DNA from: Macrostomum hystrix | Taxonomy: Eukaryota; Animalia; Platyhelminthes | Length of the DNA stretch: 64,000 nucleotides | Reading direction: 5' to 3' | NCBI GenBank assembly: GCA_950097015.1 | Contig: CATNEN010000033.1 | Location: forward strand, 1,550,001 to 1,614,000 | Part shown: piece after piece, positions 4,097-53,000 of the stretch | Numbering within the stretch: the stretch's first letter is position 1 | Layout of the letters: each line of letters starts with the position of its first letter | Program-made: the position numbers and the translations under genes | The notes under the pieces: generated by a model | The model's input: the letters and a program-made list of their open reading frames with translations, nothing else | What the model was told of the DNA's origin: nothing | Database searches by the model: none

Positions 4097-7000
4097 ATGG
4101 ACGACTGCGAATTCAGAAAGATCGTCTGCAGCTCCGCCGGGCATTCCAGCCTGGAGGCGGCCCTCGCGCACGAGTCGACGGACATGAACGAGCAGCACCG
4201 GGCCACTTATAGCAGCCGCTACAGGCGCCGGATGCTGTACGCCAATGTGCACACCTTCGCGCACAAGACATCGGCTCACGGTCTGGGCCGATTCTTCTCT
4301 CAGCAGATTCCCTGGCTGCGGACGCTGTGGTGCATGGTGGTGCTTGGAGCCCTGACTGGCCTCACAATGCACACTTACAAGCAGATCAGCCTGTTTCGAG
4401 ACTACCCCGTGTCCAGCACAACCCGCCTGCTCACCAACCGCTTCGCATTTCCAGACGTGACCTTCTGCGACCCGCTGATGAAGAAATTCTTCACCATGCC
4501 GTCGCAGCTGCTGTACAGCGGCAACATCGCCATTCGGAACTACTTCGCCCTGAACATGATACTCGGCTACAGCTTCGCCGTGGATGGCGAGAAGCCGGAG
4601 GACAGCCGTGTCAGGGCCATGAAGCTGGCCTACTCAGGCTTTGAGCACGCTGTGCACACCTGGCCAATCTTCAACATGACCAACGTGAGCGCCCGCATCC
4701 TGGACATGCTGGTGTACTGCCAGTACAACCAGGAGCCTTGCTCAGAGAAAAACTTCACCGTCTTCTACCATAGAGACTACGGCAACTGCTTCTCATTCAA
4801 GGCCAGCAACAGATTCATGAAGTCCAGCGGTGTAGAGAAGGGCCTGGTGCTGGTGCTGTACAGTCCGAGTGTGGACATCATCCAGAACAACGACTTCTAC
4901 AGTGACACTGTGACCACCGGCTTGGAGACAGGGGGACTCCGCGTTGTTGTACACCAGGAGGTGAGCAATGGGGCGCCCGGGCTCTGACTTGGGGCTGCTC
5001 AGATGCTGGGACTCCCCACAACAGCCCCCTCCACACCCGAGTCGAAGCAGTTAAAGTCAATCATCGAGGAGGCGTTGATTATCAGACCAGCAATTCTCGG
5101 AGCAGGGCTCGCCAATTTGCATCTTTTAGCCCTGCAGTAGTGACCTGGCTCTGAAGCTAGCGGGGCCAACTTAGCAGCGCCCGGGTCCCAAGCGAGACGT
5201 CATTTGGCTAGGCCGCACTCTGATAAGTGCGGCACGGCTTCGCCAACGGCATCGGTGATACGAGTAGAGCTGGCAAAGATCTCTCGCTGTGCTCAAATTG
5301 CCTCTGTAACTGCGGCTAAGATCGCGCAGTCTTCTTAGAAAAGCCTAATTAGATCTGACCTGCCCGGAAATAGAAAATGAAGTCTCTTCCGCTTCCTCGT
5401 TGCATTGCTGAGAGCCGGAAATGTCAGCGAATCAAAAATTAATTGAGAACCTTAGAGACAGATCCTCAAAATTTGGGGCATGTACTCTAATCTTGGTAGC
5501 TTGTCAAAATATTATTTTAAATTATGAAACGCCCAACTTGACTAGTTGTAATTTCTATTTATCTACACGATTCTACAGTATAGTTTGGAATTGCTTGAGT
5601 TCTTATGTGCGCCTAGAATCTGCCCTGCTTTGCTCCGAGCTCCGAGGTCTCCTCCACACTTTCCCCTGGGGCGTCGCGAGGCATTTATAAGAGGCCAAAT
5701 TGGCAAAGATAGACTGCTTCAAGTTCATTTACGCGGCTAATAGGCAAATCGTTGACCTCTGCGGGCCTTTTTTCACTGTCTCTCTTGCTCCTCCGCCGGC
5801 AGTGAAAAGTTTAGTGAATTGGGGAGAGGGGTGTGAGAGGCCAGCTCCCAGGTGGGGTTACTAATGCGGTCGGTGCCAGCGCAAACGGCCCGCCTTGAGT
5901 CACATTTCTGAGCTGTCCTTTTAGATTGAAGCCGAGGAAGGTAGAACTTTTATTGGCTGCTCAGCTGACATCACTAGTAAAAGGACCTGCATGCTCCTGA
6001 TCTTAAGGATTTCGCATTTAAAAGTGCAACCGGGTTGCATCAGTTGGAGCTGAAGAATTCTGCGATCCTTCCACTTGCTGCATTGTTGCACAACAAAAAA
6101 GTGCATTAAAATAATGCGACTGGGGCAGGCGATTGCCTTCAGATGCTGCCTTGGAATACACATAAAATCCCACATCGAATGAATAGTGGAGTGGTGAAGT
6201 GGACACGTGCAATCAGATAAAGCCTGGCCATCGCACAGCTTCCAGGTAGGCCTGCTGTGCTTGAAGCAGCTTGTACTGTAAAGTCGATCTTCGTGACTAA
6301 CTCGCTCAGAATGCAACCCAAATGTTTTTCCCAGTTATGCTTTTAGCCGGCTCGCGTAAACATTTTACCTTTTAATCAAGCTTGATGCTTATTGATCTGT
6401 GCTCAATCAAGCTCGATGGTTATTGATCTGTGCTCAATCAAGCTCGATGGTTATTGATCTGTGCTCAATCAAGCTTGATGGTTATTGATCTGTGCTCAAT
6501 CAAGCTCGATGGTTATTGATCTGTGCTCAATCAAGCTTGATGGTTATTGATCTGTGTTCAATCAAGCTTGATGGTTATTGATCTGTGCTCAATCAAACTT
6601 GATGGTTATTGATCTGTGCTCAATCAAGCTTGATGGTTATTGATCTGTGCTCAATCAAGCTTGATGGTTATTGATCTGTGCTCAATCAAGCTTGATGGTT
6701 ATTGATCTGTGCTCAATCAAGCTTGATGGTTATTGATCTGTGCTCAATCAAACTTGATGGTTATTGATCTGTGCTCAATCAAGCTTGATGGTTATTGATC
6801 TGTGCTCAATCAAGCCTGATGGTTATTGATCTGTGCTCAATCAAGCTTGATGGTTATTGATCTGTGCTCAATCAAGCCTGATGGTTATTGATCTGTGCTC
6901 AATCAAGCCTGATGGTTATTGATCTGTGCTCAATCAAGCCTGATGGTTATTGATCTGTGCTCAATCAAGCTTGATGGTTATTGATCTGTGCTCAATCAAG

Positions 7001-10000
7001 CCTGATGGTTATTGATCTGTGCTCAATCAAGCTTGATGGTTATTGATCTGTGCTCAATCAAGCTTGATGTTTATTGATCTGTGCTCAATCAAGCTTGATG
7101 GTTATTGATCTGTGCGCAATCAAGATTGGTGATTATTTATCAGTGCTCAAAAAAGCTTGATGATTTGTCGATTCATGCTCAATCAAGCTTTTTTATTATT
7201 GATCAGTGCTCAATCAAGCTTCACGCTTCTTTTTTCAAGGTCCAAAACTGTGCCATAAGATTTCATTCTGTCTAATTCCCATGATCTGCTCTTCCCCTAA
7301 TTTCTCCCATTCTTTGCAATGTTTCTGTCTCGCCGCATATTTGCATAGTCCAGCCTGGAACTCCCAACTCCCCAGTAAATGCTGATCTCTGGCGCTCTCT
7401 TGTCAGAAGCGAGGCCAATTTGTGTCAAAAAAGTTCTGATTGACACATTCTCTTCCTCCAAGAAACAAAGCAGGCAGAGAGAAATGAGCAGGCACAGGGT
7501 GCTGCGGTCTGCGCATGAAGTCCTGTGGCAAGCCTTGCTATGGAATTTCACGGCCGACGTGCCGGAGAATCAGCGAGAATGCCTGAGCAAACGCAACCCG
7601 CTTTGCTGCACTTCGCTGCACCAGCCGCAGCTCCGCCCATTTCTAACTGTCCGCAGACAGATCCGAGAGGGAGGACCCGGCAGTGGGTGCAGCGATTTAT
7701 TTTCCGAAAAATATACCTTTTGCAATCTGGTTTGCCAGAACTGTAATCTATTTTGCCCGAAACGAATTTATTTGAGAACGAATCAACTAAAACTAACAGG
7801 GACTGACCTGACACACTGCACAATTGACTTCGAAGAGTTGCAAAAATCAATGACTAAGTTCATATAAATAGAGTCGTCTGTTGCTTGTCATTCAATCATA
7901 GTTGTTAATTAGCTGCGGACACCTCTGAATGCACGTTTGAGTATGATTCACCCACTGAATGCTGCCATGCTGTCATGCTGCCATGCTGTCATGCTGTCAT
8001 GCTGTCATGCTGTCATGCTGTCATGCTGTCATGCTGTCATGCTGTCATGCTGTCATGCTGTCATGCTGTCATGCTGTCATGCTGTCATGCTGTCATGCTG
8101 TCATGCTGTCATGCTGTCATGCTGCGAGATTCTGTTCTATCGTGGCATTCGCTGCCAGTGCCAAATTTCTGTCAGGATCTTCTCGTTGGATGGCAGTCTT
8201 TTGAATTCTCACCTCAGTGCTGATCCTGCCCTCTCGACTGGGTTGATGAATGGTGAATATGGCGGCAGAAAGCGAAAGTCATGACCGTTCGACATCACAG
8301 GAACATTGAGATGGGCCCTTGCTCCGTCAAACAGAACGACGAAATCTCCCTCGACTAGTCGATCGATCTCTGACAAAAATCCGGCGAAGTGCTCGTTGCG
8401 AAATCCGCCTTTGTTCAGAGCAAAGTGCACAAGACGCAAGCTCCTGGGAAATCGCCAGGATTTGTCTATGGTTCAAACCATGGCAATGAATGGGCAGGCT
8501 GAGCCAAGATATAGAAATATGTAAGTAAATTCTCTCCGTGGACAAAATTGATTGCAGTTTTGGCAAACTACGCTCGCAGATTGCAAAATGGCAGATTAGA
8601 CTGGGCTGAGACAACCCAGTCTGAGAAGCTTGCAACTTGCTGACGGGAAAACTTTTTGTAGTTGGACAAGCTGAGAGGCGCGGCAGCTGATTGTATCTTT
8701 AATTTGATGCGCACTGCAGTGGATTTGCATGATTCATGCTCTGGATTCTCATTTGTCCCGTTGTTATCGTTCCTGGCATTCAAACACAAGCATTAGCTTC
8801 AGTTTATTGCGCATATAAATCAGGATTTGCTCCAACAGACATTTCCACCGGCTGCATCTATCTAGCTCTCATGCTGTCGCAACTCTTGCATTTCAGTGGC
8901 TGAATGATGCAGTCTGGCGGCAAGTCGTGAAACTTCCGGATTAATTAATACCAAATTTCAGTTACTATGCGGCACCAAGTCATCTTCTGTTTCACTCCTA
9001 TCAGACCTGTTGGGACACATATTATTACCTGTTAGATCTCTGTTAGACACAGATTCAAACCTGTTAGACACCGATTCAAACCTGTTAGACACAGATTCAA
9101 ACCTGTTAGACGCATATTCAAACCTGTTAGACACAGATTCAAACCTGTTAGACACCGATTCAAACCTGTTAGACACAGATTCAAACCTGTTAGACGCAGA
9201 TTCAAACCTGTTAGACACAGATTCAAACCTGTTAGACACAGATTCAAACCTGTTAGACACAGATGCTTAAACAGTAAAAATAACAAGCTATTTAATCTTA
9301 TTGCGAAGATTAAGATTATTTTCGCCTATGTTTGCTAGCCTAAAAGTAATTTAGACGAAATTAGCCCTTCTAAATAAATGACTATTTCGAAAAACCAGTT
9401 CGTACTTGTTTATATCTACAGTAACTAAGCAGGACGACACAAAAGGGCCCAAATTGAGTTAACACCAATCAAATAAATTTCACTGGGAACTTTTGACATT
9501 CACCTATAAAGATATACAAAGCTAAATTGAACAGATCGGCGTAATTGCACTGCGGTTGCATATCAGTGATGGATCGTATTGGCCAGTGCTGAACACCAGC
9601 TATTTAAACTAATTGGGACAGAGGCTGCACACGCACTCGCTCTGAATTCTCCGGGTCAAACGCAAGGTTGATTTATTTGATGGGGTTTAGGCCGCCACCA
9701 GCTGCCAACCCGTCAGAGGGCTAGGGTTAGGTTTAGGGTTAGGGTTAGGGTTAGGGTTAGGGTTCGGGTCCCTGAATCCCGTTAGGCAGAAATTGAAACC
9801 TCAACTGGCGCTGGCTCCTCGGGCTAGATTTTTCTTAAGCATGGGAACGAATTGCTAATCTTCTTTTGGGGTGGAGAAGGACACAATGCCAAGATTTAAT
9901 GCTTTGAAATTGCTTCTAAAATGCCATCCGTTGCTTTACGAGTTTTGTCTATCGAGATGCGAGTTTTATCGCTTTTTGGTTTCAGATTAGTTTTTCTCTT

Positions 10001-13000
10001 TCGTTGCTGCTTTTACAGAGGGGAGTGGGGTTGAAGGCCAGCTTCGTGACAGATTTAGTTTTTCTCCGAATTCGGTTCCACACAGATTCAAGAATTTCAG
10101 TTTCTGTGGTAAGCATATGAAGTTCGGAAAAGTTTCACTTGCTGATTCTGACTTACCTGTGTACGACTGATTGTTCATTTTTGCACCCCTTCTTCTGAAA
10201 GAATGTGGCAAATTGTACCTGAGTCTTGATGTACTTTGAGCATCAATGCAATGAGTCATAATGTACTTCAACAGTCACTGCACTAAATCATGAAGTGCTT
10301 CAAAAGTCACTGCGGTGAGTCATGATAAAAACTGAGATTCATCATACGATTCGAAAACCTGACCTCCGCAGGACACGATCCCCTATCCCAGCGAGTACGG
10401 CATCAACTCGCCCAGCGGCATGCAGACGGTGCTGGCGCTCAACCAGGTGCAAACCAGCCTGGCCAACACTCCGACTAAGCGCTGCGAGCCCAGGGATAAG
10501 TTCAGCGCCTTCGACCACCTGCTCAAGTGAGCTGGGGTCCCGTAGCTTGAATCCAGTAGTTGGAATCCCGTATTTAACATCCCATAGTTGGAATCCCGTA
10601 TTTAACATCCCATAGTTGGAATCCCATATTTGGAATCCCATAGTTGGAATCCCATAGTTAGAATCCCGTAGTTGGAATCTCATAGTTGGAATCCCGTAGT
10701 TAGAATCCCATAGTTGGAATCCCGTAATTAGAATCCCGTAGTTAGAATCCCGTAGTTAGAATCCCGTAGTTTGAATCCCATAGTTGGAATCCCGTAGTTA
10801 GAATCCCGTAGTTAGAATCCCGTAGTTAGAATCCCATAGTTGGAATCCCGTAGTTAGAATCCCGTAGTTTGAATCCCATAGTTGGAATCCCGTAGTTAGA
10901 ATCCCGTAGTTTGAATCCCATAGTTGGAATCCCGTAGTTGGAATCCCATAGTTGGAATCCCGTAGTTGGAATCCCGTACTCGGTGTTCTGAGCTCGAAGA
11001 CCCGTATTAAGAGACCCCGTAATGGGAGTCCCGTAGTTGAAGTTCCCGCGGAGTTTTTCATTGTCGTTACGTCCTTAATCTTATTTTAACAAGCAGGTGT
11101 GGTTAGATCCATGGCCCAAATATGCAGAGGCCTATTAAACTCAAGTTTATTGCGAAATTGTCGGAGACAATTATATTAAGTGTGGCAGCTTAGCGCCATT
11201 GATTTCAGCTAACTTTTAAAGAAGATATAACACGTAATTGTTGGATGAGCATAGCTTTTGCGGTTATATCATTTCTGAGCTGAGTTCAGAGTTTAGAGCC
11301 GTATCAAGGCCATAGACACCGAAGATTAAAACAATCGTTGCCTAGCACTGGTACGCTAATTCTTTCCATTGGCTAGAACTTAAGCGGTTATAGCCATAGA
11401 CAAAAGCACAAGGCAGAAATAATCTGGCACGCCAAGCTAGAAATTAATCAGTTAAGAAGAGTCCATAGTCTATGGTAGAAGGCAAAGCCAGAAGCCGTTG
11501 TCTTGCATATAACCTACAAACAATGATGGTTAATTTTGTTTGCCGTGCCAAGGGATTGTAAACCAGAAAAAACTGATAAACACAATGTATACTGTACGGC
11601 CTAAGGATAAGGAATTAAGAGATGCAGCAGAAAATGCGACAAGCATTCGCACTCCGTCGGGTACGGGATCGGCACTCAGTGATAGCGGGGGAAGTGCGCC
11701 TCCCCCCTCGGCCTAATTAGAAGCGCCTGAACAAGCAGGGCGGATGCGGGCCGCAAATACACAGATAGAGAGAGATAGAGAGAGGAAAAGCAGAAGACTG
11801 ATTTGGACCCGATGAGCCGCCAACGCTGTGAAAACAGCAGGCGGGCTGTGCCAGCTTGACACAACACTCTCGTGTTTGCGAGCAGAGCGGGTATCCGAGA
11901 GCTTTAGCAAGAAATCCATAGCCGACAAAGCGAGTATTATCATTCGGTTTTCGATTCTCTGACGCACTATACTGCTACCGGCTAGTCCTCAAGGCCTGTG
12001 GAGAATTGGTGAAAAATTTTTCAGCCAACGCATAAAATGGTCTGCGCAAGTTGGTTTAGTGCATAGTTTATTACTTTTATTGCGCAAGTTGGTTTAGTGT
12101 AGAGTTTATTACTTTTCTTGTGTATTAAACTAGTTTTTCCAAGTCTGGTTACTGGACTGGGGATTCGAGCTCGCTACTCTCCGCATTATCGACTCTGGAA
12201 TTCATCGGGAATTAGGCCTTAGTTTGATCTGATTGGCGATAACTAAATCACTTTGTCCAAGTCCCACGAGTCACTGCTTCTGATCTTGGCCCAATTAGGA
12301 TAATCTTTTCTGCTCATAAGAGACATCGTGGAGAAAAATAAGTTAAAAACTCGATCAACACAGAAGCAGTACCGACTCACAGTCTTCTCAAGCTGTCGCG
12401 GAGAAGGCCGGCCAGCTTTTTCGGTCGATTTATTATTCATTAGCTCTGGGCTATGGGGAGTCTCGGGAACGTTCTTGCCTTTACTTGTCCAATGGCGCCA
12501 ATGCCTTGCCCACAGGTGATTCTTGGAATGCGAGGGTAGCACTGGGTCTCCTTCGCTCTTGAAGGTTGTGCCAGCACTGTAGCACAGTAGCACACATATT
12601 TTATGCCACGTTACGATAAGCACAAATAGTATCGATTCGGTGTACTAGTACGGTAATTCATGATTTGTTCACAGTTCGAAATGTCCGAAATGTAAATATA
12701 GCCAAATGTGGTGGTATAAATATATAGTTTATTTCTATCGTCTATGGGCAAAACTGGCTGTTACTTGGATGTGAAACGCGTCCTCAGCCGTGCCTGGGAC
12801 ATAGACAACGAAATCTGGGGGGGGGTTACTTATAATTCCGTTTATTTTTGTCTATGGTCTGAATTCAAATCAGAGGACTCACTTCTTGGCTGAGGTGAAG
12901 CCGAGAAATAAATAATCAGTACGTAATAACTAATGCTCCGGTCTGTCTACGGAAAATATTCTGAAATAATAAATATGTAACGATATTTTAGATTAACGGT

Positions 13001-16000
13001 TCTTATTTAATCCGCTGACCCTAGTCCTAAAAACGAGCGATTAAAAATATTATGATCCTTTTAACTTCGTTAGTAACGGAATATTTTTGTAACGATATTT
13101 TCAACGCCCGCAGCCAAACACAGGCTTACGAGAAGCAGTTGGCCGACTGCACGACCTTCGAGCACGTCGCCAGCGTTCGAGCCAAGTGCGACTGCACCAT
13201 CGAGGGTGTGTTGGAGCTCAGCAAGGGCGAGAAGCCGATTCGAACCTACTGCAACGACATCCTGGGAGCTCAGGAGCCGTACAAGCTGCTGCCTCTCCTG
13301 ACTGACGTGATTAAATTTCTGCTCACAGACCAGAAGCAACACAACTACAGCATGGTCGAGAGGGGTGCCATCTGGGCTGAACGATATCAGAATGCGTCCG
13401 AGAATAACAGGGACTTGCTGGTGGACCTGTCGGCGCGAATTCTGGCCGCGTTTCCCAGCATCAGACAGAGAGTGAACCGCATGAAGTGCGCCCTGCCAAG
13501 GCTGAAGTCAGGCAGGCAGCAGTCGGTGTGTCTGAACATCTGCAACTACACCACTTATGACTTCTCCGTGTTCCAGAGCCGGTGGCCTGATCTCGGCTTC
13601 GACATTCGCGGCGCCAGGATTCGTCTCGCTCGCATCGCCAGGATGATTCAGGGCCGACTGGACGCTGTGAACCAGATTCTCAAGGTGCGGATGTAGCGAG
13701 GAGCCGGCTCTGATGCCAGTCTAGTCACACGGAGTTTGTAACTCAATGAAGCCCAAGGGAGGCAATTTGCGTCCTTGAGAAACACAATATTTAAGTGTTT
13801 CAGTTCAACCAGTTGTACCATTGGGGCCAGTGAGGGGCCCCCGATAGTCCATGGACTGAACAGCTGTACGCAGCCTTTAGAATATGCGGCTGGCTGTGTC
13901 GTACATCTGGCCTAACTGGGTGACATTTCAATATCTATTTTATAGTCTGGAGATCTTGAAAAGTAGCATAAAATTAGTGAACAGCGCCGAGGAAGTAAGG
14001 CGAAGGCGAGGCAGTGGCGAGCAAAGTGAACAAAGCGGGGAACAAAGCCCCTGTGAGGTGCGAAAGTGTACTTTTAGCAATATTGTTATAAAACTGTGGT
14101 AAGGAAGATTAGGAAGTAAAAAAAGCATGGATAAAGATAAAAAAATTGAGCACGGGAGGGCGAGACAGGGCAGCCTGCCCTGAGCCCTGCGCACGGCGTT
14201 AAAAACACGCCCAAAGGCTGGGGGGTGGGGCAGCACAAGCGCTCACGCGAGAGAAAGCGATCGATAAAGGCGGCCCTCCCCCCGCCGCGTTCACTAACCC
14301 GGAGTAGCTACGCTACTCTCCACATTTAGCGTAATAGCCATGAAAACTCCACAAGAGTTGGTGGGACCAGATGCTGTGACTGTAGAGTTGTCGCTTATTT
14401 TCCATTGAAGGGCCAGAACCACGCTCTCAACCACTCGATCGCGCTTCACAAAGTGGACCTTCACCAGTGCCTGGAGGACGAGCTTAACTCCAAGGCCAAC
14501 GTGTTCCACAATGACAGCCTGTGCAAACGGGTGCACGATATTGTGCGCCAGAGCTTCCTGCAGCTGCGAGTCTACCCGAAGACCCTGACAGTCAGGCAAC
14601 TATTCGAAGAGAGAAGCTACGAGCTAGTTAACCTGTTCTCCGATCTTGGGGGCATCATGGGTGAGTAGCAGTGCTGAGCCTGTTCCCTGATCTTGGCGGC
14701 ATCATGGGTGAGTAGCAGTGCTGAGCCTGTTCCCTGATCTTGGCGGCATCATGGGTGAGTAGCAGTGCTGAGCCTGTTCTCTGTTCTTGGGGGCATCATG
14801 GGTGAGTAGCAGTGCTGAGCCTGTTCTCTGTTCTTCGGGGCATCATGGGTGAGTAGCAGTGCTGAGCCTGTTCTCTGTTCTTCGGGGCATCATGGGTGAG
14901 TAGCAGTGCTGAGCCTGTTCTCTGATCTTGGCGGCATCATGGGTGAGTAGCAGTGCTGAGCCTGTTCTCTGATCTTGGCGGCATCATGGGTGAGTAGCAG
15001 TGCTGAGCCTGTTCTCTGATCTTGGCGGCATCATGGGTGAGTAGCAGTGCTGAGCCTGTTCTCTGTTCTTGGGGGCATCATTGGTGAGTAGCAGTGCTGA
15101 GCCTGTTCTCTGATCTTGGCGGCATCATTGGTGAGTAGCAGTGCTGAGCCTGTTCTCTGATCTTGGCGGCATCATGGGTGAGTAGCAGTGCTGAGCCTGT
15201 TTTCTGATCTTGGCGGCATCATGGGTGAGTAGCAGTGCTGAGCCTGTTCTCTGATCTTGGCGGCATCATTGGTGAGTAGCAGTGCTGAGCCTGTTCTCTG
15301 ATCTTGGCGGCATCATTGGTGAGTAGCAGTGCTGAGCCTGTTCTCTGATCTTGGCGGCATCATGGGTGAGTAGCAGTGCTGAGCCTGTTTTCTGATCTTG
15401 GCGGCATCATGGGTGAGTAGCAGTGCTGAGCCTGTTCTCTGATCTTTGCGGCATCATGGGTGAGTAGCAGTGCTGAGCCTGTTCTCTGTTCTTCGGGGCA
15501 TCATGGGTGAGTAGCAGTGCTGAGCCTGTTCTCTGTTCTTCGGGGCATCATGGGTGAGTAGCAGTGCTGAGCCTGTTCTCTGATCTTCGGGGCATCATGG
15601 GTGAGTAGCAGTGCTGAGCCTGTTCTCTGATCTTCGGGGCATCATTGGTGAGTAGCAGTGCTGAGCCTGTTCTCTGATCTTGGCGGCATCATGGGTGAGT
15701 AGCAGTGCTGAGCCTGTTCTCTGTTCTTCGGGGCATCATTGGTGAGTAGCAGTGCTGAGCCTGTTCTCTGATCTTGGCGGCATCATGGGTGAGTAGCAGT
15801 GCTGAGCCTGTTCTCTGATCTTTGCGGCATCATGGGTGAGTAGCAGTGCTGAGCCTGTTTTCTGATCTTGGCGGCATCATGGGTGAGTAGCAGTGCTGAG
15901 CCTGTTCTCTGATCTTTGCGGCATCATGGGTGAGTAGCAGTGCTGAGCCTGTTCTCTGATCTTGGCGGCATCATGGGTGAGTAGCAGTGCTGAGCCTGTT

Positions 16001-17026
16001 CTCTGATCTTTGCGGCATCATGGGTGAGTAGAGCAGTGAGAAGTTTGGTTTAAGTGCGTCAGAATATTCATGCGGAAGCACTCCTACCGATTGGTTCCAG
16101 TAGCTTGGGAGTGCAGTGCAGTTAAAATATTGCATTTAACTTGGTGTCAACTGACTGACTTTATTTTAAGCCGAAAGTTTAAGCGCGAATGCCATCTATG
16201 GGGAACGTTAATTGAAATCTCGCATATAAAATTGTAAAAGCACTCACTCTGACTTCTCAAAAGCGAATCGAACTCACGCAAAGTTGACAATTCAATTAGC
16301 CATCTAAGAATGTTCTGCACCCTCTCATACGCAGGTCTGTGGATCGGCGTCTCAATGGTGACGCTGTGTGAGTTCGCAGAGATCCTACTAATAGTAGTGT
16401 CCTATTACATGCGATCCGCGTTGAGAAAGGTCACCCGCCTGGCTGAAGGCGTGACTGTAGAGCTGAAGATGGACCAGGCGCAGCGCGCCGGTGGCAGCAA
16501 CCATCGCGACCCCCGCGACAGTCCGGATCGGGCCACCAACGACCCAGCGCGGCTGTCGCTACTGGGCAGCAGTCGGAAGCTCGGCAACCACTTTGACCAC
16601 AGCAGCAACCCGAATGTGTACCAGCAGCCCCGGCTGCAGGCTAGCCGGCAGTGGCGTCGGCGCGAATTCGAGACCGCCTCGGTCGGCAACCCGTGGACGG
16701 AACTTCAGTCGCCATTGTTGCCCTCGACGGTTCCAGATGCGTCGCCCCCGCTGCCGCAGCCGGCGCCACCACCGATGCCGCCTCCATCTTCGCTTCCAGC
16801 TGGATACACGCACGTTGGATGCGCTTTCAGTAATCGATCGGATGGCAACGACACCGGAGGGACCGTCGCTGCTAAGCCGCCGCAACCGACGCTGCTGCTG
16901 CTCCCGGCCGGAGCGGCAGGAAATCTGCGACAATCAGGACGGCGACGGACGAAGCGCAGCGGAGACGCCGGCGACGTGAGTCCACCAGCCTGCGCGGTGC
17001 TCTACAATCGGGAGACTCAGCTGTGA
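4097..17026 (+). CDS. DEG/ENaC family (ASIC/FaNaC-like) amiloride-sensitive channel subunit; 5 coding exons: 4097-4960, 10372-10526, 13114-13684, 14411-14660, 16335-17026
   Basis: Family motifs FAHKTSAHG (HG gating motif), TM1, FPDVTFC, YGNCFSF, GLRVVVHQE|DTIPYP, Cys-rich thumb, SRWP, YELVNLFSDLGGIM|GLWIGVS (TM2, GxS filter). GT-AG junction phases (0,2,0,1) all join in frame. Start ATG uncertain (4097 or 4184). Confidence 0.93.
6375..7220. repeat. 31-bp minisatellite (~25 copies) in ENaC intron 1
   Basis: CTCAATCAAGCTTGATGGTTATTGATCTGTG with degenerate edges. Confidence 0.95.
7962..8125. repeat. 8-bp tandem repeat (TGTCATGC)n
   Basis: Direct reading. Confidence 0.95.
8140..8500 (-). pseudogene. 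Tc1/mariner-IS630 superfamily transposase relic (C-terminal DDE region)
   Basis: VVLFDGARAH...FLPPYSPFINPVE matches the DNAxxH / LPPYSPxLNPIE motifs; followed by an in-frame stop, with an apparent frameshift upstream. Confidence 0.8.
9020..9265. repeat. 21-bp minisatellite (~11 copies)
   Basis: AACCTGTTAGACACAGATTCA repeated. Confidence 0.95.
9721..9765 (+). repeat. Interstitial telomeric-type (TTAGGG)n tract
   Basis: CTAGGG TTAGGT TTAGGG x5 then degenerate. Confidence 0.85.
10550..11040. repeat. 14-bp minisatellite at the start of ENaC intron 2
   Basis: GTTGGAATCCCGTA and variants. Confidence 0.95.
13740..13935 (+). mobile_element. Degenerate copy of the tRNA-derived SINE family also at 45197 and 51474
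   Basis: Shares ATTTG(C/T)GTCCTT, TTCAG.TCA.CCAG.TGT and AGTCCATGGACTGAACA..TGTACGCAGC with the 51474 copy. Confidence 0.65.
14632..16031 (+). repeat. 47-bp x30 array spanning the ENaC exon 4 end and its 5' splice site
   Basis: Unit CCTGTTCTCTGATCTTGGCGGCATCATGG|GTGAGTAGCAGTGCTGAG; first donor 14661, last donor 16024 = exactly 29 x 47 bp. Confidence 0.97.
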
Positions 17027-40746: not shown

Positions 40747-43700
40747 CTACTGTACTTCAGCGGGCTGCTGAGCCCCCGACTCCGACTGCTGCACCCGCTG
40801 ACCTCGCATCAGAACGTCCATCTGCGACGTCAGGAACGATGTGATCCCCTCCAGATTGCGCCGAATCTCCGAGTCCAGGATCTGCGTCTTCTGAAGGTTC
40901 TCCCTGGAGGAAGTTTGTGCGGGGAATTACTGCTGTCATTACTGTGGGAGAGTGCGCGAGAGTGACTGCAGACCCAGCGGCGTGTGAGGTAGAGTGAGTG
41001 ACTGCAGACCCAGCGGCGTGTGAGGTAGAGTGAGTGACTGCAGACCCAGCAGGGTGTGAGGTAGAGTGAGTGACTGCAGACCCAGCGGCGTGTGAGGTAG
41101 AGTGAGTGACTGCAGACCCAGCGGGGTGTGAGGTAGAGTGAGTGACTGCAGACCCAGCGGCGTGTGAGGTAGAGTGAGTGACTGCAGACCCAGCGGCGTG
41201 TGAGGTAGAGTGAGTGACTGCAGACCCAGCAGCAGCGTGTGAGGTAGAGTGAGTGACTGCAGACCCAGCGGCGTGTGAGGTAGAGTGAGTGACTGCAGAC
41301 CCAGCGGGCGTGTGAGGTAGAGTGAGTGACTGCAGACCCAGCAGCGTGTGAGGTAGAGTGAGTGACTGCAGACCCAGCGGCGTGTGAGGTAGAGTGAGTG
41401 ACTGCAGACCTAGCAGGGTGTGAGGTAGAGTGAGGGACACAAGACAAAGTGGACAGGGAAGGGTGTGAGGTCGAGAAAGAGCCAGGATGCTCTCGCACCT
41501 GCCGCGAGACTGCATATCGTCCATCTGCAGCTCGGTGAGTTGCTGCTTGTATCGCAGGTAGGTCTTGAGGGAGAAGTGAGTTTTCTCCTGCAGCCGCTTG
41601 CCCTGCTTGAGGTCTCGCACAGCCTCCTCGCGGCGCAAGATCTCATTCAGCAGGTCCAGCAGGTCCTCTTTCATGCGGAAGCCTTCGTTCTGTCTCGCCC
41701 GATAATCGCCGGCAAGGCGCCTGTTTTCCTCCAGCGCTGCCCGGTACTCACTCTGAAAAAGGTGGATTGCGTGCGCGTTTTATGCTACTGCTGTGGTTGC
41801 TAGGTAGTAGGATGTACGCGTTTTTTTGTTAAGCCCTGAGGCAAGAAAAAAGTTACATTTTCTGCGAATTCTCTCATTCAACATCGGCGATCCCACCCTG
41901 AAAGACACCCGACACCACTGCAATTCCGGCACCTCGAGACACCTCCAACCACTGCGATTCTTACCCCTAGAGACACCTCCAACCACTGCGATTCTTACCC
42001 CTAGAGACACCTCCTACCACTGTGATTCTTACCCCTAGGGACACCTCCTACCACTGCGATTCTTACCCCTAGGGACACCTCCTACCACTGCAATTCCTAC
42101 CGCTAAAGACCTAGAGACACCTACCACTGCGATTCCTGCACCTTGAGACACCCGCGACCTCAGCTATTTCCGCTCTTAGAGACTTCACTAGAGCCTGGTC
42201 AATACTGACCTCCAACTGCCGCAGGGTCTCACGTCGGTTCTCCTGCAGTCGGCGGTGCTCGTCGGCCCGCGAAGCCATGCGAGCCTGCACGGCGGCCAGC
42301 TGGGCCTTAAGAGTGTCGTCGCTACGCACGGATTTGGATAGCTCGTGAGTCAGCTGCTGCATCTGGTCTCTGTGGGGTTTCAGTGTTACAAGTAAGTTTA
42401 TGCTTTCCCATATGACACGGAATACCCTCGCATTCACGATGTTCTAGGCTCTAGAAGTAGAAAGGCTTTGACCTCGTGATCCGTAGGAAAATGTTGGAAG
42501 GCAATCTTTGCTTAAAAATGCATCGAGGACTAAAAATGCACAACTCACAGAAACAGTTTATAAAAATCTCCCATACACCATATTCTCAAATGCAAACATT
42601 GCGACTATCTGTCGGGGACTCACAATTAAGGAATTTCTTAAGTAAGAACTGACTTTAGCTATCTCTTCAATATATATTTCAGAATTTTGGCCCTTAAATA
42701 TCTTCCCACCGGTTGCAAGTTCAGTGTTCTACTTTTATCGGTTGTTGGCTCGAATTAGATTGGACTTCAACGAGTTAAACAAGATTTCTCTATCCCTCAA
42801 TTGCACTTGATTGGCTGGTTAGGAGTTGGACGAGATTTCTCTACTCCTCCATTGATTTTGATTGGCTAAAAAAATCCAACCCCGTCATCCGGCTCACTCC
42901 AGCAGCCGAATAGCGTCCGTGAACTTTAGCTGCGTCCGCTTAATCATGCCAGTCTGGTCGTAGATGTCGTGAATCTTCTTGTTCATCATATCAATCTGCT
43001 TGTCCAGATCTGCTAGCCGGGTGCAAAGCCGGTCCACCTCCGCCTTCTCGGCTTCGTGCTTCGGCCGCAGCTCGCCAATCCGGGCGTCCAGCCGCGCCTC
43101 TGTCTGGCGCCGCTCCTCCAGCAGGTCGTCCAGCTCGCGTTGTAGGGCATCGGCTACGGCGCACTTCTCGGCTGATTCGGCCCGCAGCTTTGCAACCTTT
43201 TGGCGCATCTGCGAGACCAGGACCTCCATCTTCTCGGCCATCTTTTTTAGCTTGGCCTTCTTCACCTGTTGTTGTTTGGGATGTTCATGAGTGATTGCGC
43301 TTCAAGAAGCCTGCAATATTTCCCTACACAGTCAGTAACTAATAAATGCATGCTTTACACAAGCCAAATCTGCTCACCTTGGCCTCGACCTTGGACTTGC
43401 CCAAGTCCCTGGTGTCCGTCTCGATGCGCACGATCAGCCGCTCGCGGGTGGCGATCTCGTCCTGCACCTGCTTCTGCAGCTGGGCTATGGAGGCCTTGAG
43501 CGAGTCCTCGACAAACATCACCTTCTTCTCTTCGCTCTCCAGCTTCTTGGCCACATTGGAGTGCTCCTGCGCGACCTTGCTGAACTCCTCCAGAATGCGC
43601 AGCATCTCCTCCTGGGTGCGCTCCAGCTCCGCCTCCATCCGGGCCAGGTTCTTCTCGTCGTCCACCTTTTGACGCTCGCTATGTAAAATAAAGAAAATAA

Positions 43701-50062: not shown

Positions 50063-53000
50063 ATGGCAGAAGAAACAAATGACAAACCGAAAGCTATTGA
50101 ATTAACAGAAGAGAAATTGACTTCATTTGCTGATTTGGTAAGTGACTTTTCTTTTAAATTGTTCTTATCTCCAGTGAATATAGCTTATTGCTTGATTTAA
50201 AACTAAGAAATCACATTGAATTCCTCTTCTACCTGTCAGGGTGTTAACGAGGCACTGTGTGAAGTGATCGCCAGCCTGCAGTGGCGCGCACCCACAGCCA
50301 TCCAGGTGGAGGCCATTCCTCTGGCGCTGGCTGGGCGCGATGTCATCGGCTTAGCTGAGACTGGCTCTGGCAAGACTGCCGCCTTCGCCCTGCCAATCAT
50401 TCAGGCCCTGCTGGAGGGCGAGGCGCATCCGAATTTCGCTTTGGTGCTGACACCAACAAGAGAGTTGGCCATTCAGATTCAGGAGCAGTTTCAGGTGAGG
50501 CCTAGGGTTACTGAGTCTTATATTGAACACTATTTAATTCCAATCATTCAGGTTCATAGTCCCTTTCGACCTATTTATGTTTTCCTTAAATTGAGTTTCT
50601 CTGCAGTCCTTTCTTAGTTTTTATCGCTCCGTTTTGGTCCTTCCACCCAAATCGTTCCTTGTCACTCCTTTAGAGCCATTAATCTACTCCGAATCGAAGC
50701 TCGCATCTCAACTGTTTCCAGGCCCTGGGCAAGCCACTTGGGGTTCGCACTATTTGCCTTGTTGGCGGCCTGCACAAAACCGACCAGGCCATTGTGCTGT
50801 CCAAGCGCCAGCATCACGTGATCATCGCTACTCCCGGCCGTCTGGCCGATCATCTGGCCGACACCAAAGGATTCGATTTGCGCCGACTGCGCTTCCTAGT
50901 ACTCGACGAAGCCGACCGGATTCTCAATATGGACTTTGAGGACTCGCTCAACAAGATTCTACAGGTTTGTGCTCCCCATTTTATTTGCTGTAGGGAGGTC
51001 GGTTGGCTGAGACTTGAGAGCAGACGGATGCTAGTCATTTCGTCAACTTTTTTTATGAATAACGATTAAAAACCTGGTCACTTATTGAACCGTGCAGTTA
51101 GCATAGGTTAGCGCATATACAATCAAAAGAATAAGCCTTACATACAATTTTAGGCATTGGCTCAGCGATGGCCAGACAATGACCCACTAATGCGTATGTA
51201 ATAGGCCTCTTTAAAACAAAGATAAAAAACAACCACATTTTTGTAACAGAATACAAAATTTCTTTATTTTTCCTAAGTCTTACTGAATTCAAATTCGTGC
51301 ACAACTCTAAATTGCTTCGGTACACATCCTTTTCTTATGACTCTTTATGTTTCAATTATCAACATTAGGATTATATTTTCATTCATTCCGTTATAACACA
51401 ACATTATATTATTCCATGTCAGTGGCTTTGACGCAATTCTTAGTTTTGGTCACTTTCGTATTGACGTTCACGAAGAGCTTGTAGCCCAGTGGTCAGAGCG
51501 TCGGACTCACAACTTGAAGGTCCGGGGCTCGATTCCCGACTCCACTGGAACCATTTGTGTCCTTAAACAAGATACTTAACTCTAAATTGCTTCAGCTCAC
51601 CCAGCTGTTAAATGGGTACCAGCATTAGCTGGGGTAATTGAGAGTGGGTGTGGCGTCCCCCCAGTCCATGGACTGAACACCCGTACGCAGCATTCAGAAG
51701 CGCCGCGCAAAAGCTGCGACTGTGCTGTCGGCTGCACATCTGACCCGATTGGGGCAGCTGTAATCAATTATTATTCTTAATATTATTATCACTTTTGTAA
51801 ACTAGTTAGAACTAAAAATAAAAACCATTGGAAACCTGCCATATCGGTAGAAGAACGAGAATGAGAAAGGACAGAACATGGGTTCATTACTAGCTTTGTA
51901 TACGTTGATCTCTTGTGACTTATAAAAATCTCCAAACCGGCCGTCCAATCAAAGGAGCTGCCCCGCGATCGCCGCACCTACCTATTCAGCGCCACCATGA
52001 CTAAGAAGGTAGCCAAGCTGCAGCGAGCCAGCCTCCGCGATCCAATCAAAGTTGAAGTCAGCGGCAAGTACAGCACAGTTGATAAGCTAGCCCAGTATTA
52101 TCTGTTCATACCGGCCAAGCTGAAGGATCACTACCTGGCCTACCTGCTGCACCAGCTGTCTGGCAGTACCATTGTGTTCACGCACACCAGACTGCAGGCC
52201 AGTCGGGTTGCCCTGTTACTCCGCGCTTTAGGCTTCTCAGCCGTCCCACTGCACGGCCAGATGGCTCAGAACAAGCGCATCGCCGCCCTGAACAAATTCC
52301 GCGCCAAAGACCGCGGCATTCTAGTCGCCACAGATGTGGCCAGCCGCGGCTTGGACATTCCTCACGTTGACAATGTGCTTAACTTTGACCTATCCAGCAA
52401 TGTGAAAGACTATGTGCACAGGGTTGGCCGCACCGCCCGCGCTGGCCGGCCAGGCATGTCGGTCACCTTCGTCACACAGTACGATGTCATGCTCTACATG
52501 GAGGTGGAGCGAGCCATCGGCAAGAAGCTGCCACTGTATGAGGTTAACCGAGATGAGGTTGTGAGGCTGGGGGACCAGGTTAGTGCTAGCGACAGTTTCT
52601 TTGCTGGTAAAATATATCCCTCCATTTTCCTCACTCCAACTGTTTACCTGCACCTGTCTACCTTCACCTGTCTACCTTCACCTGTCTACCTTCACCTGTC
52701 TACCATTCCCTGTCTACCTTCACCTGTCTACCTTTACCTGTCTACCTTCACCTGTCTACCTTCACCTGTATACCTTCACCTGTCTACCATTCCCTGTCTA
52801 CCTTCACCTGTCTACCTTTACCTGTCTACCTTCACCTGTCTACCTTCACCTGTCTACCTTCACCTGTCTACCATTCCCTGTCTACCTTCACCTGTCTACC
52901 TTCACCTGTCTACCTTCACCTGTCTACCTTCACCTGTCTACCTTTAACTAACCTCACCTGTCCTTCCTGTCCCGCTGCCCAGGTGAGCGAAGCCCAGCGC

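What the first reader, a model, noticed from the sequence alone, without database searches (positions are those of the whole stretch)
14632..16031. Thirty phased copies of an ion-channel exon end plus splice donor; each copy is a potential in-frame micro-exon encoding the DEG/gate segment
Seen: the 47-bp unit is the last 29 nt of ENaC exon 4 (LFSDLGGIM-G) plus 18 nt starting with the donor GTGAGTAG. First and last donors are exactly 29 x 47 bp apart, so there is no net indel. Each unit parses as GTGAGTAGCAG | 36 nt | GT. That 36-nt segment is phase 1-1 symmetric and reads VLSLFSDLGGIM in the native frame. Variant units give LFSVLRGIM, LFSVLGGII or LFSDLCGIM. A CTGAT branch-like motif lies about 30 nt upstream of each CAG. 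Established: in ASIC/ENaC the residue before the D in this segment is the degenerin site, just ahead of the GxS filter, and flatworms (schistosomes) have micro-exon genes. Inference: simple read-through to a distal donor hits GGT GAG TAG (stop), so the array offers 29 decoy donors for unproductive splicing. Alternatively it could be a combinatorial cassette of micro-exons that duplicates or varies the gate segment. The CAG lacks an adjacent polypyrimidine tract, so neutrality remains plausible.
Basis: partly seen in the sequence, partly recalled or inferred. Interest (0 to 1): 0.85.

Follow-up and report, generated by a model that had tools for sequence, protein, structure and literature searches.

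The report
Splice-donor minisatellite in flatworm channel gene
A short stretch spanning the end of an exon and its splice signal has been copied 30 times in a row inside a flatworm sodium-channel gene; it looks like a drifting repeat of a kind already known from humans and amphioxus, not a working set of tiny extra exons.

Summary
The array is real: 30 GTGAGTAG donors exactly 47 nt apart (14661-16024), each unit being the last 29 nt of exon 4 of a Macrostomum DEG/ENaC gene plus 18 nt of intron start. The micro-exon reading fails its tests. The CAG scores below all 34 real acceptors sampled. The 11-nt spacer cannot be an intron. Five of 7 unit variants change the protein (neutral rate), whereas 11 of 11 differences between the real exon and its M. 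lignano homologs are silent. An in-frame micro-exon parse arises by chance in 15-35% of random junction units. The six closest M. lignano loci have the same intron without the array and one gate segment. The window is 28% minisatellite, and one junction-covering array is chance level. This is a donor-spanning minisatellite like human F7 IVS7 and amphioxus 'mirages', where the first donor is normally used. This scan has noted many such arrays elsewhere in this genome, some with in-frame units. Splicing here is untested: the run finder was closed, so no reads were laid. Distal-donor use, which would give a stop before the filter, stays open.

The parts
14632..16031 (+). 47-bp minisatellite, 29.8 copies, 11 unit types, mean pairwise identity 95.7%; first copy is the real exon 4 end
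14411..14660 (+). DEG/ENaC exon 4 (250 nt, ends in phase 1 after LFSDLGGIM); AAG acceptor
14661..14668 (+). authentic 5' splice site (first donor), same position as in M. lignano homologs; read-through stop TAG at 14666-14668
14708..16031 (+). 29 further donor copies at 14708 + 47k, last at 16024; six have T instead of G at -2
14669..14707 (+). first would-be CAG acceptor (14669-14671) and 36-nt would-be micro-exon (14672-14707); repeats every 47 nt, 29 times; acceptor context G-rich and weak
16032..16334 (+). unique 3' part of intron 4, ending in a normal pyrimidine-rich CAG acceptor; last donor to acceptor = 311 nt, first donor to acceptor = 1674 nt
16335..17026 (+). exon 5: completes Gly codon, LWIGVS (GxS filter), rest of TM2 and a long Pro-rich tail to the stop
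4097..4960 (+). exon 1 coding part (start codon not fixed; TM1 and ectodomain start)
10372..10526 (+). exon 2
13114..13684 (+). exon 3

Best explanation
A donor-spanning minisatellite ('mirage' / F7-type VNTR). A 47-bp piece covering the last 29 nt of exon 4 and the first ~18 nt of intron 4 was tandemly duplicated in this Macrostomum lineage and expanded by slippage or unequal exchange, like the other arrays that fill this genome (shown: anatomy, absence in homologs, patterned unit variants). Because all added copies lie 3' of the original donor, they sit in the intron as long as the first donor is used, so the protein is unchanged and the array drifts (inferred from precedents and from the lack of constraint on the copies). 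Some leak to the second or third donor, giving a truncated message, is likely at a low level (inferred from CBS, IFI6 and ABCA7).
For: Array absent from the same intron in the six closest M. lignano loci, whose gene models all carry one LFSDLGGIM. The 18-nt part matches the intron start after the last donor (15 of 18 with a 2-nt gap) and the M. lignano L005 intron start. Array variants: 2 silent, 5 replacement, against 26% silent expected if neutral; real exon against homologs: 11 silent, 0 replacement; Fisher p = 0.0025. Neighbouring units are more alike than shuffled ones, p = 0.007. Window is 28% minisatellite; 0.4-0.6 donor-covering arrays expected by chance, one seen. CAG scores -5.7 against -2.5 to 9.3 for 34 real acceptors. 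Precedents use the first donor: F7, LMNB2, PDGF, amphioxus Adh3, globins, TnC. Exons 2 and 4 show pN far below pS, and all five frames are open.
Against: No transcript of this gene from this species was seen (closed; blank). The precedents are chordate; in an animal with short introns the donor nearest the acceptor (311 nt away, like the 261-302 nt introns of three homologs) might compete. The acceptor model rests on 34 sites, 23 called by eye. pN/pS against M. lignano says nothing about the time since the array arose.
Confidence: 0.74

Rival explanations
1. Distal donors compete substantially, so much of the message keeps one or more units, hits the stop at 14666 before the GxS filter and TM2b, and is degraded or makes a dead subunit. 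The array then lowers channel output (copy number as a rheostat) or is knocking the gene out.
For: All 30 donors are near-identical and strong. The last donor would give a 311-nt intron, close to homologous introns of 261-302 nt. Leaky use of the next one or two donors is documented for CBS and IFI6 and ABCA7, where it gives a premature stop. Every distal donor is unproductive.
Against: First-donor dominance in F7 and amphioxus. The gene shows no decay. Such arrays seem common in this genome (unchecked notes), which is hard to square with each one crippling its gene.
Confidence: 0.17
2. Selected or at least active micro-exon cassette: some units are spliced in as 36-nt (or 39/42-nt) symmetric exons, adding a second, variable copy of the DEG/gate segment ahead of the filter.
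For: Symmetric phase, stop-free, native frame; CTGAT 28 nt upstream in 22 units; the 7 extra nt encode hydrophobic V-L-S. No variant falls in the first 24 nt of the unit, though that gap is only marginal (p about 0.04 after the fact; 0.13 for the 11-nt spacer alone).
Against: Acceptor G fraction 0.45 against at most 0.25 in 23 window acceptors; two upstream AGs against none in 22 of 23; 26th percentile of random YAG. Adjacent units are 11 nt apart; shortest introns seen are 88 and 79 nt. 18 of 29 units alter invariant residues (S>P, D>V, G>R, G>C, M>I) at the neutral rate. 3n parse expected in 15-35% of random junction units, and once 3n the native frame is automatic. No homolog has a doubled segment. 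A 12-residue insert inside TM2a would probably uncouple the gate (inference; not modelled).
Confidence: 0.05
3. The array, or its copy number, is an assembly artefact.
For: Tandem arrays are hard to assemble; no raw reads were checked.
Against: 11 unit types built from 7 shared substitutions, no indels, locally clustered; every unit differs from the real exon end at one fixed base; 1.4 kb is well within a long read. Errors would give indels or identical copies.
Confidence: 0.04

Closest known systems
Human F7 IVS7 37-bp VNTR, and the like arrays in CBS IVS13, IFI6 (6-16) intron 2, LMNB2, PDGF intron 4 (PMC1557585)
   Same: Minisatellite whose first unit spans the exon-intron boundary, so the authentic donor is followed by many identical pseudo-donors.
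   Different: More exon per unit here (29 nt against 4 nt in F7), about 30 copies, a flatworm, and the copied codons are a channel gate. Donor choice is measured there and not here.
Amphioxus 'mirage' minisatellites in Adh3, globins BflGb6/9, TnC, PGBD5 (PMC3087553, PMC3902484)
   Same: Tandem copies of an exon-intron boundary in a repeat-rich invertebrate genome, units of 10-160 bp, concerted evolution; that paper already proposes that an exonic part of a unit could become a real exon.
   Different: Different phylum. Length polymorphism and normal splicing are shown for mirages and untested here.
ABCA7 intron 18 25-bp VNTR (PMC5954066)
   Same: Array starts at the donor; use of the next donor retains one unit and gives a premature stop.
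   Different: Its unit begins at the GT and holds no copied exon codons; a length effect on splicing is shown there.
Schistosoma micro-exon genes, MEGs (PMC10526429)
   Same: Flatworm; short exons of 3n length.
   Different: MEGs are secreted proteins built of 10-20 distinct micro-exons separated by 0.1-5 kb introns; here the spacers are 11 nt, the copies are near-identical, and the host is a conventional channel gene.

Membership tests
Donor-spanning minisatellite (F7-type VNTR / mirage) | Head-to-tail repeat of minisatellite size | tested here: met
   47 bp x 29.8, 96% matches
Donor-spanning minisatellite (F7-type VNTR / mirage) | First unit spans a true exon-intron boundary, so the donor is reiterated in the intron | tested here: met
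   Donor at 14661 matches the intron position in M. lignano gene models; 29 further copies
Donor-spanning minisatellite (F7-type VNTR / mirage) | Concerted turnover of units without coding constraint | tested here: met
   Neighbours more alike, p = 0.007; 5 of 7 variants replacement
Donor-spanning minisatellite (F7-type VNTR / mirage) | Length polymorphism between individuals | not testable with these tools
Donor-spanning minisatellite (F7-type VNTR / mirage) | Most upstream donor used, normal mRNA | not testable with these tools
   No RNA data reachable
Schistosome-type micro-exon gene (MEG) | Short exons, mostly 3n | tested here: met
   36/39/42-nt parses are 3n, but this is chance level
Schistosome-type micro-exon gene (MEG) | Micro-exons separated by introns of 0.1-5 kb | tested here: not met
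   Spacer is 11 nt; MEG definition
Schistosome-type micro-exon gene (MEG) | Functional 3' splice site before each micro-exon | tested here: not met
   Score -5.7, below all 34 real acceptors; a sequence test, not a splicing assay
Schistosome-type micro-exon gene (MEG) | Small secreted protein with signal peptide, made mostly of micro-exons | tested here: not met
   Host is a five-exon DEG/ENaC channel, PF00858
Schistosome-type micro-exon gene (MEG) | Inclusion and skipping seen in transcripts | not testable with these tools
DEG/ENaC channel (host gene) | ASC domain with TM2 motif DEG site - Asp - GG - GxS | tested here: met
   PF00858 on exons 1, 3, 4; homolog P0130, identical over this motif, aligns to ASIC1 and FaNaC TM2

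The most novel reading that the evidence does not exclude
Some units are spliced in as symmetric micro-exons, so a minisatellite makes channel isoforms with a doubled or altered DEG/gate segment that reach the membrane and change gating or act as dominant negatives: a repeat-born micro-exon cassette caught at its origin.
Probability: 0.04. Interest if true: 0.75.

Novelty: new member of a known kind. Interest (0 to 1): 0.17.

Why it matters
As it stands it is one more donor-spanning minisatellite. It has modest value as a clean natural test of 5' splice-site choice outside chordates: 30 near-identical donors, where only the first gives a working channel and the last would restore an ancestral-sized intron. 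If micro-exons were really included, it would show exon birth from a repeat inside a channel gate, which would matter for channel evolution and for the mirage model of intron and exon gain; the sequence evidence makes that unlikely.

Tried and rejected
Exon 1 in the search for homologous proteins: nothing, because of the length window. Exact look-ups of exon products: none. Exon 4 against metagenome contigs: none. Rfam over 13600-16500: none. RNA fold of exon end plus first units: less stable than shuffles, z = +1.28, so no sign of a structure hiding the donors. Idea that VLSL comes from a paralog's exon: rejected, all close homologs read ELVNLF, the first 24 nt of the unit have no match in the fetched loci, and the 18 nt match the intron start. 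Idea that splice signals are conserved within the array: not significant. A long open frame through the array: none, stops in all six frames. Paper searches gave nothing useful.

Full report
Observation. The array is as described. TRF reports 14632-16031, period 47, 29.8 copies, 96% matches and no indels. There are 30 GTGAGTAG donors from 14661 to 16024, all 47 nt apart, and none elsewhere in the window. Each of 29 units is an 11-nt spacer plus 36 nt that read VLSLFSDLGGIM in phase 1. Six sites vary, with seven variant alleles, giving 11 unit types and 95.7% mean identity. Only 11 units keep LFSDLGGIM. CTGAT survives in 22 units, 28 nt before the next CAG; it is the Ser-Asp codon pair of the copied exon. 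Reading through any donor meets TAG at once, first at 14666-14668.

Host gene and organism. The gene is a five-exon DEG/ENaC channel (PF00858): 4097-4960, 10372-10526, 13114-13684, 14411-14660, 16335-17026 (start codon not fixed). The neighbouring TCP1-alpha is 93% identical to Macrostomum lignano and about 75% to other animals, so this is another Macrostomum species. M. hystrix is a guess from contig counts only. The closest proteins are M. lignano channels P0130/P0133, P0131/P0134 and P0132, 71-75% identical over exon 4. P0130 has the same TM2 motif and aligns to ASIC1 so that the Ser before Asp is the degenerin site, eleven residues before the GxS glycine (PMC5309578).

Origin. In six M. 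lignano loci (L001, L004, L005, L006, L007, L008) the intron lies at the same position, is 261-918 nt long, and has no junction array; the gene models, from a transcript-guided annotation, carry one gate segment. The 18 non-exon bases of the unit match the intron start after the last donor and the intron start of L005. So the unit is one contiguous piece of the old junction, amplified in this lineage. Neighbouring units are more alike than shuffled ones (p = 0.007), as expected from slippage or unequal exchange. The window is 28% minisatellite in 29 arrays and the M. lignano loci are 24-49%. From unit lengths and 23-35 donors, 0.4-0.6 arrays should cover a donor by chance; one does.

Test of the micro-exon idea. 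(a) Acceptor. I collected 23 acceptors from this window (called by eye from reading frames) and 11 from M. lignano models. Real sites score -2.5 to 9.3 in leave-one-out; the unit's CAG scores -5.7, TAG -9.6 and GAG -10.5. The CAG sits at the 26th percentile of random YAGs. Its upstream 20 nt are 45% G against at most 25% in window acceptors, and hold two AGs against none in 22 of 23. (b) Geometry. Adjacent units are 11 nt apart; skipping one gives 58 nt, still under the shortest introns seen (88 and 79 nt, a small sample). The first would-be micro-exon has its branch motif inside exon 4. (c) Chance. Random units drawn across real donors give a 3n YAG parse 35% of the time, 15% with the whole exon end kept; once the length is 3n, the native frame follows automatically. 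(d) Selection. Over the same nine codons the real exon differs from its homologs by 11 alleles, all silent; the array has 2 silent and 5 replacement alleles, matching the neutral 26% (Fisher p = 0.0025). The replacements hit the DEG site, the gate Asp and the next Gly. This could be read as diversification, but it is exactly what drift gives. The first 24 nt of the unit are invariant, a marginal pattern (p about 0.04 after the fact).

How it most likely works. Shown: every donor but the first gives a stop before the filter and the second half of TM2; the gene's frames are open and pN is far below pS in exons 2 and 4. Inferred: the spliceosome takes the first donor, the whole array leaves with a 1674-nt intron, and the copies drift. 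Human F7 has the same layout and uses only the most upstream donor; LMNB2 and PDGF do the same; CBS and IFI6 also use the next two (PMC1557585). Amphioxus mirages do not disturb splicing, and the globin paper already suggests that a unit could turn into an exon (PMC3087553, PMC3902484). ABCA7 shows leak to a second donor with a premature stop (PMC5954066). The main open rival is real competition by distal donors: the last one is 311 nt from the acceptor, close to the intron length in three homologs. I give 0.74 to a mostly silent array, 0.17 to substantial unproductive splicing, 0.05 to micro-exon use, 0.04 to artefact.

What could not be tested. No transcript-derived sequence of this gene from this species turned up.

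Earlier notes of this scan. Other windows of this genome carry many arrays of the same build, in GPCR, SLC13, FKBP, coronin, transporter and GABA-receptor genes, some with in-frame units. These are unchecked notes; I used them as leads (the amphioxus papers, the chance test) and not as support. One reports first-donor use in assembled transcripts for another array; I could not check it.

Verdict. A real, tidy example of a known kind: a donor-spanning minisatellite (F7-type VNTR, mirage). It is not a schistosome-type micro-exon gene: intron size, acceptor and host protein all fail. That the copied codons are a channel gate is striking, but the gate lies at this exon end in the homologs too, so any junction array here would copy it. 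Interest 0.17.

Noticed in passing
window 13685-14410: Intron 3 of the channel gene (726 nt, AAG|GT ... AAG|GG) is absent from all M. lignano homologs and from the more distant paralog, where exons 3 and 4 are contiguous: a likely lineage-specific intron gain. No terminal inverted repeat was obvious.
   Followed up: partly
L002:6630-9675 and L003: In the more distant paralog P0126 the TM2 intron lies 9 nt upstream (inside the GG) of its position in the window gene and close homologs: possible intron sliding at this same junction.
   Followed up: partly
window 41914-42110, minus strand: A 34-bp intronic array whose unit holds a donor-like G|GTAAGA, about 100 nt downstream of the real donor near 42209 of a coiled-coil gene; it does not copy the exon end.
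   Followed up: no
window 9040-9264, 32009-32269, 34074-34847: Three arrays of different period share a core ACCTGTTA(G/A)ACA, suggesting a common seed or mobile source.
   Followed up: no
window 9717-9769: About nine telomere-like TTAGGG copies inside intron 1 of the channel gene.
   Followed up: no
window 13846-13882 and 51663-51699; L004, L005, L008: A 37-nt stretch of intron 3 matches (89%) an intron of the DEAD-box helicase gene and three M. lignano loci; in the helicase intron it follows a tRNA-like stretch near 51475-51545, so it may be part of a SINE-like repeat (by eye).
   Followed up: no
window 14408-14410 and 51952-51954: Two of 23 hand-called acceptors end in AAG rather than YAG.
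   Followed up: no
window 27968-63340: Neighbouring genes by eye: an RRM protein, a coiled-coil gene on the minus strand, a DEAD-box helicase, TCP1-alpha (tested) and a TPR protein; many of their introns are largely filled by a private minisatellite.
   Followed up: partly
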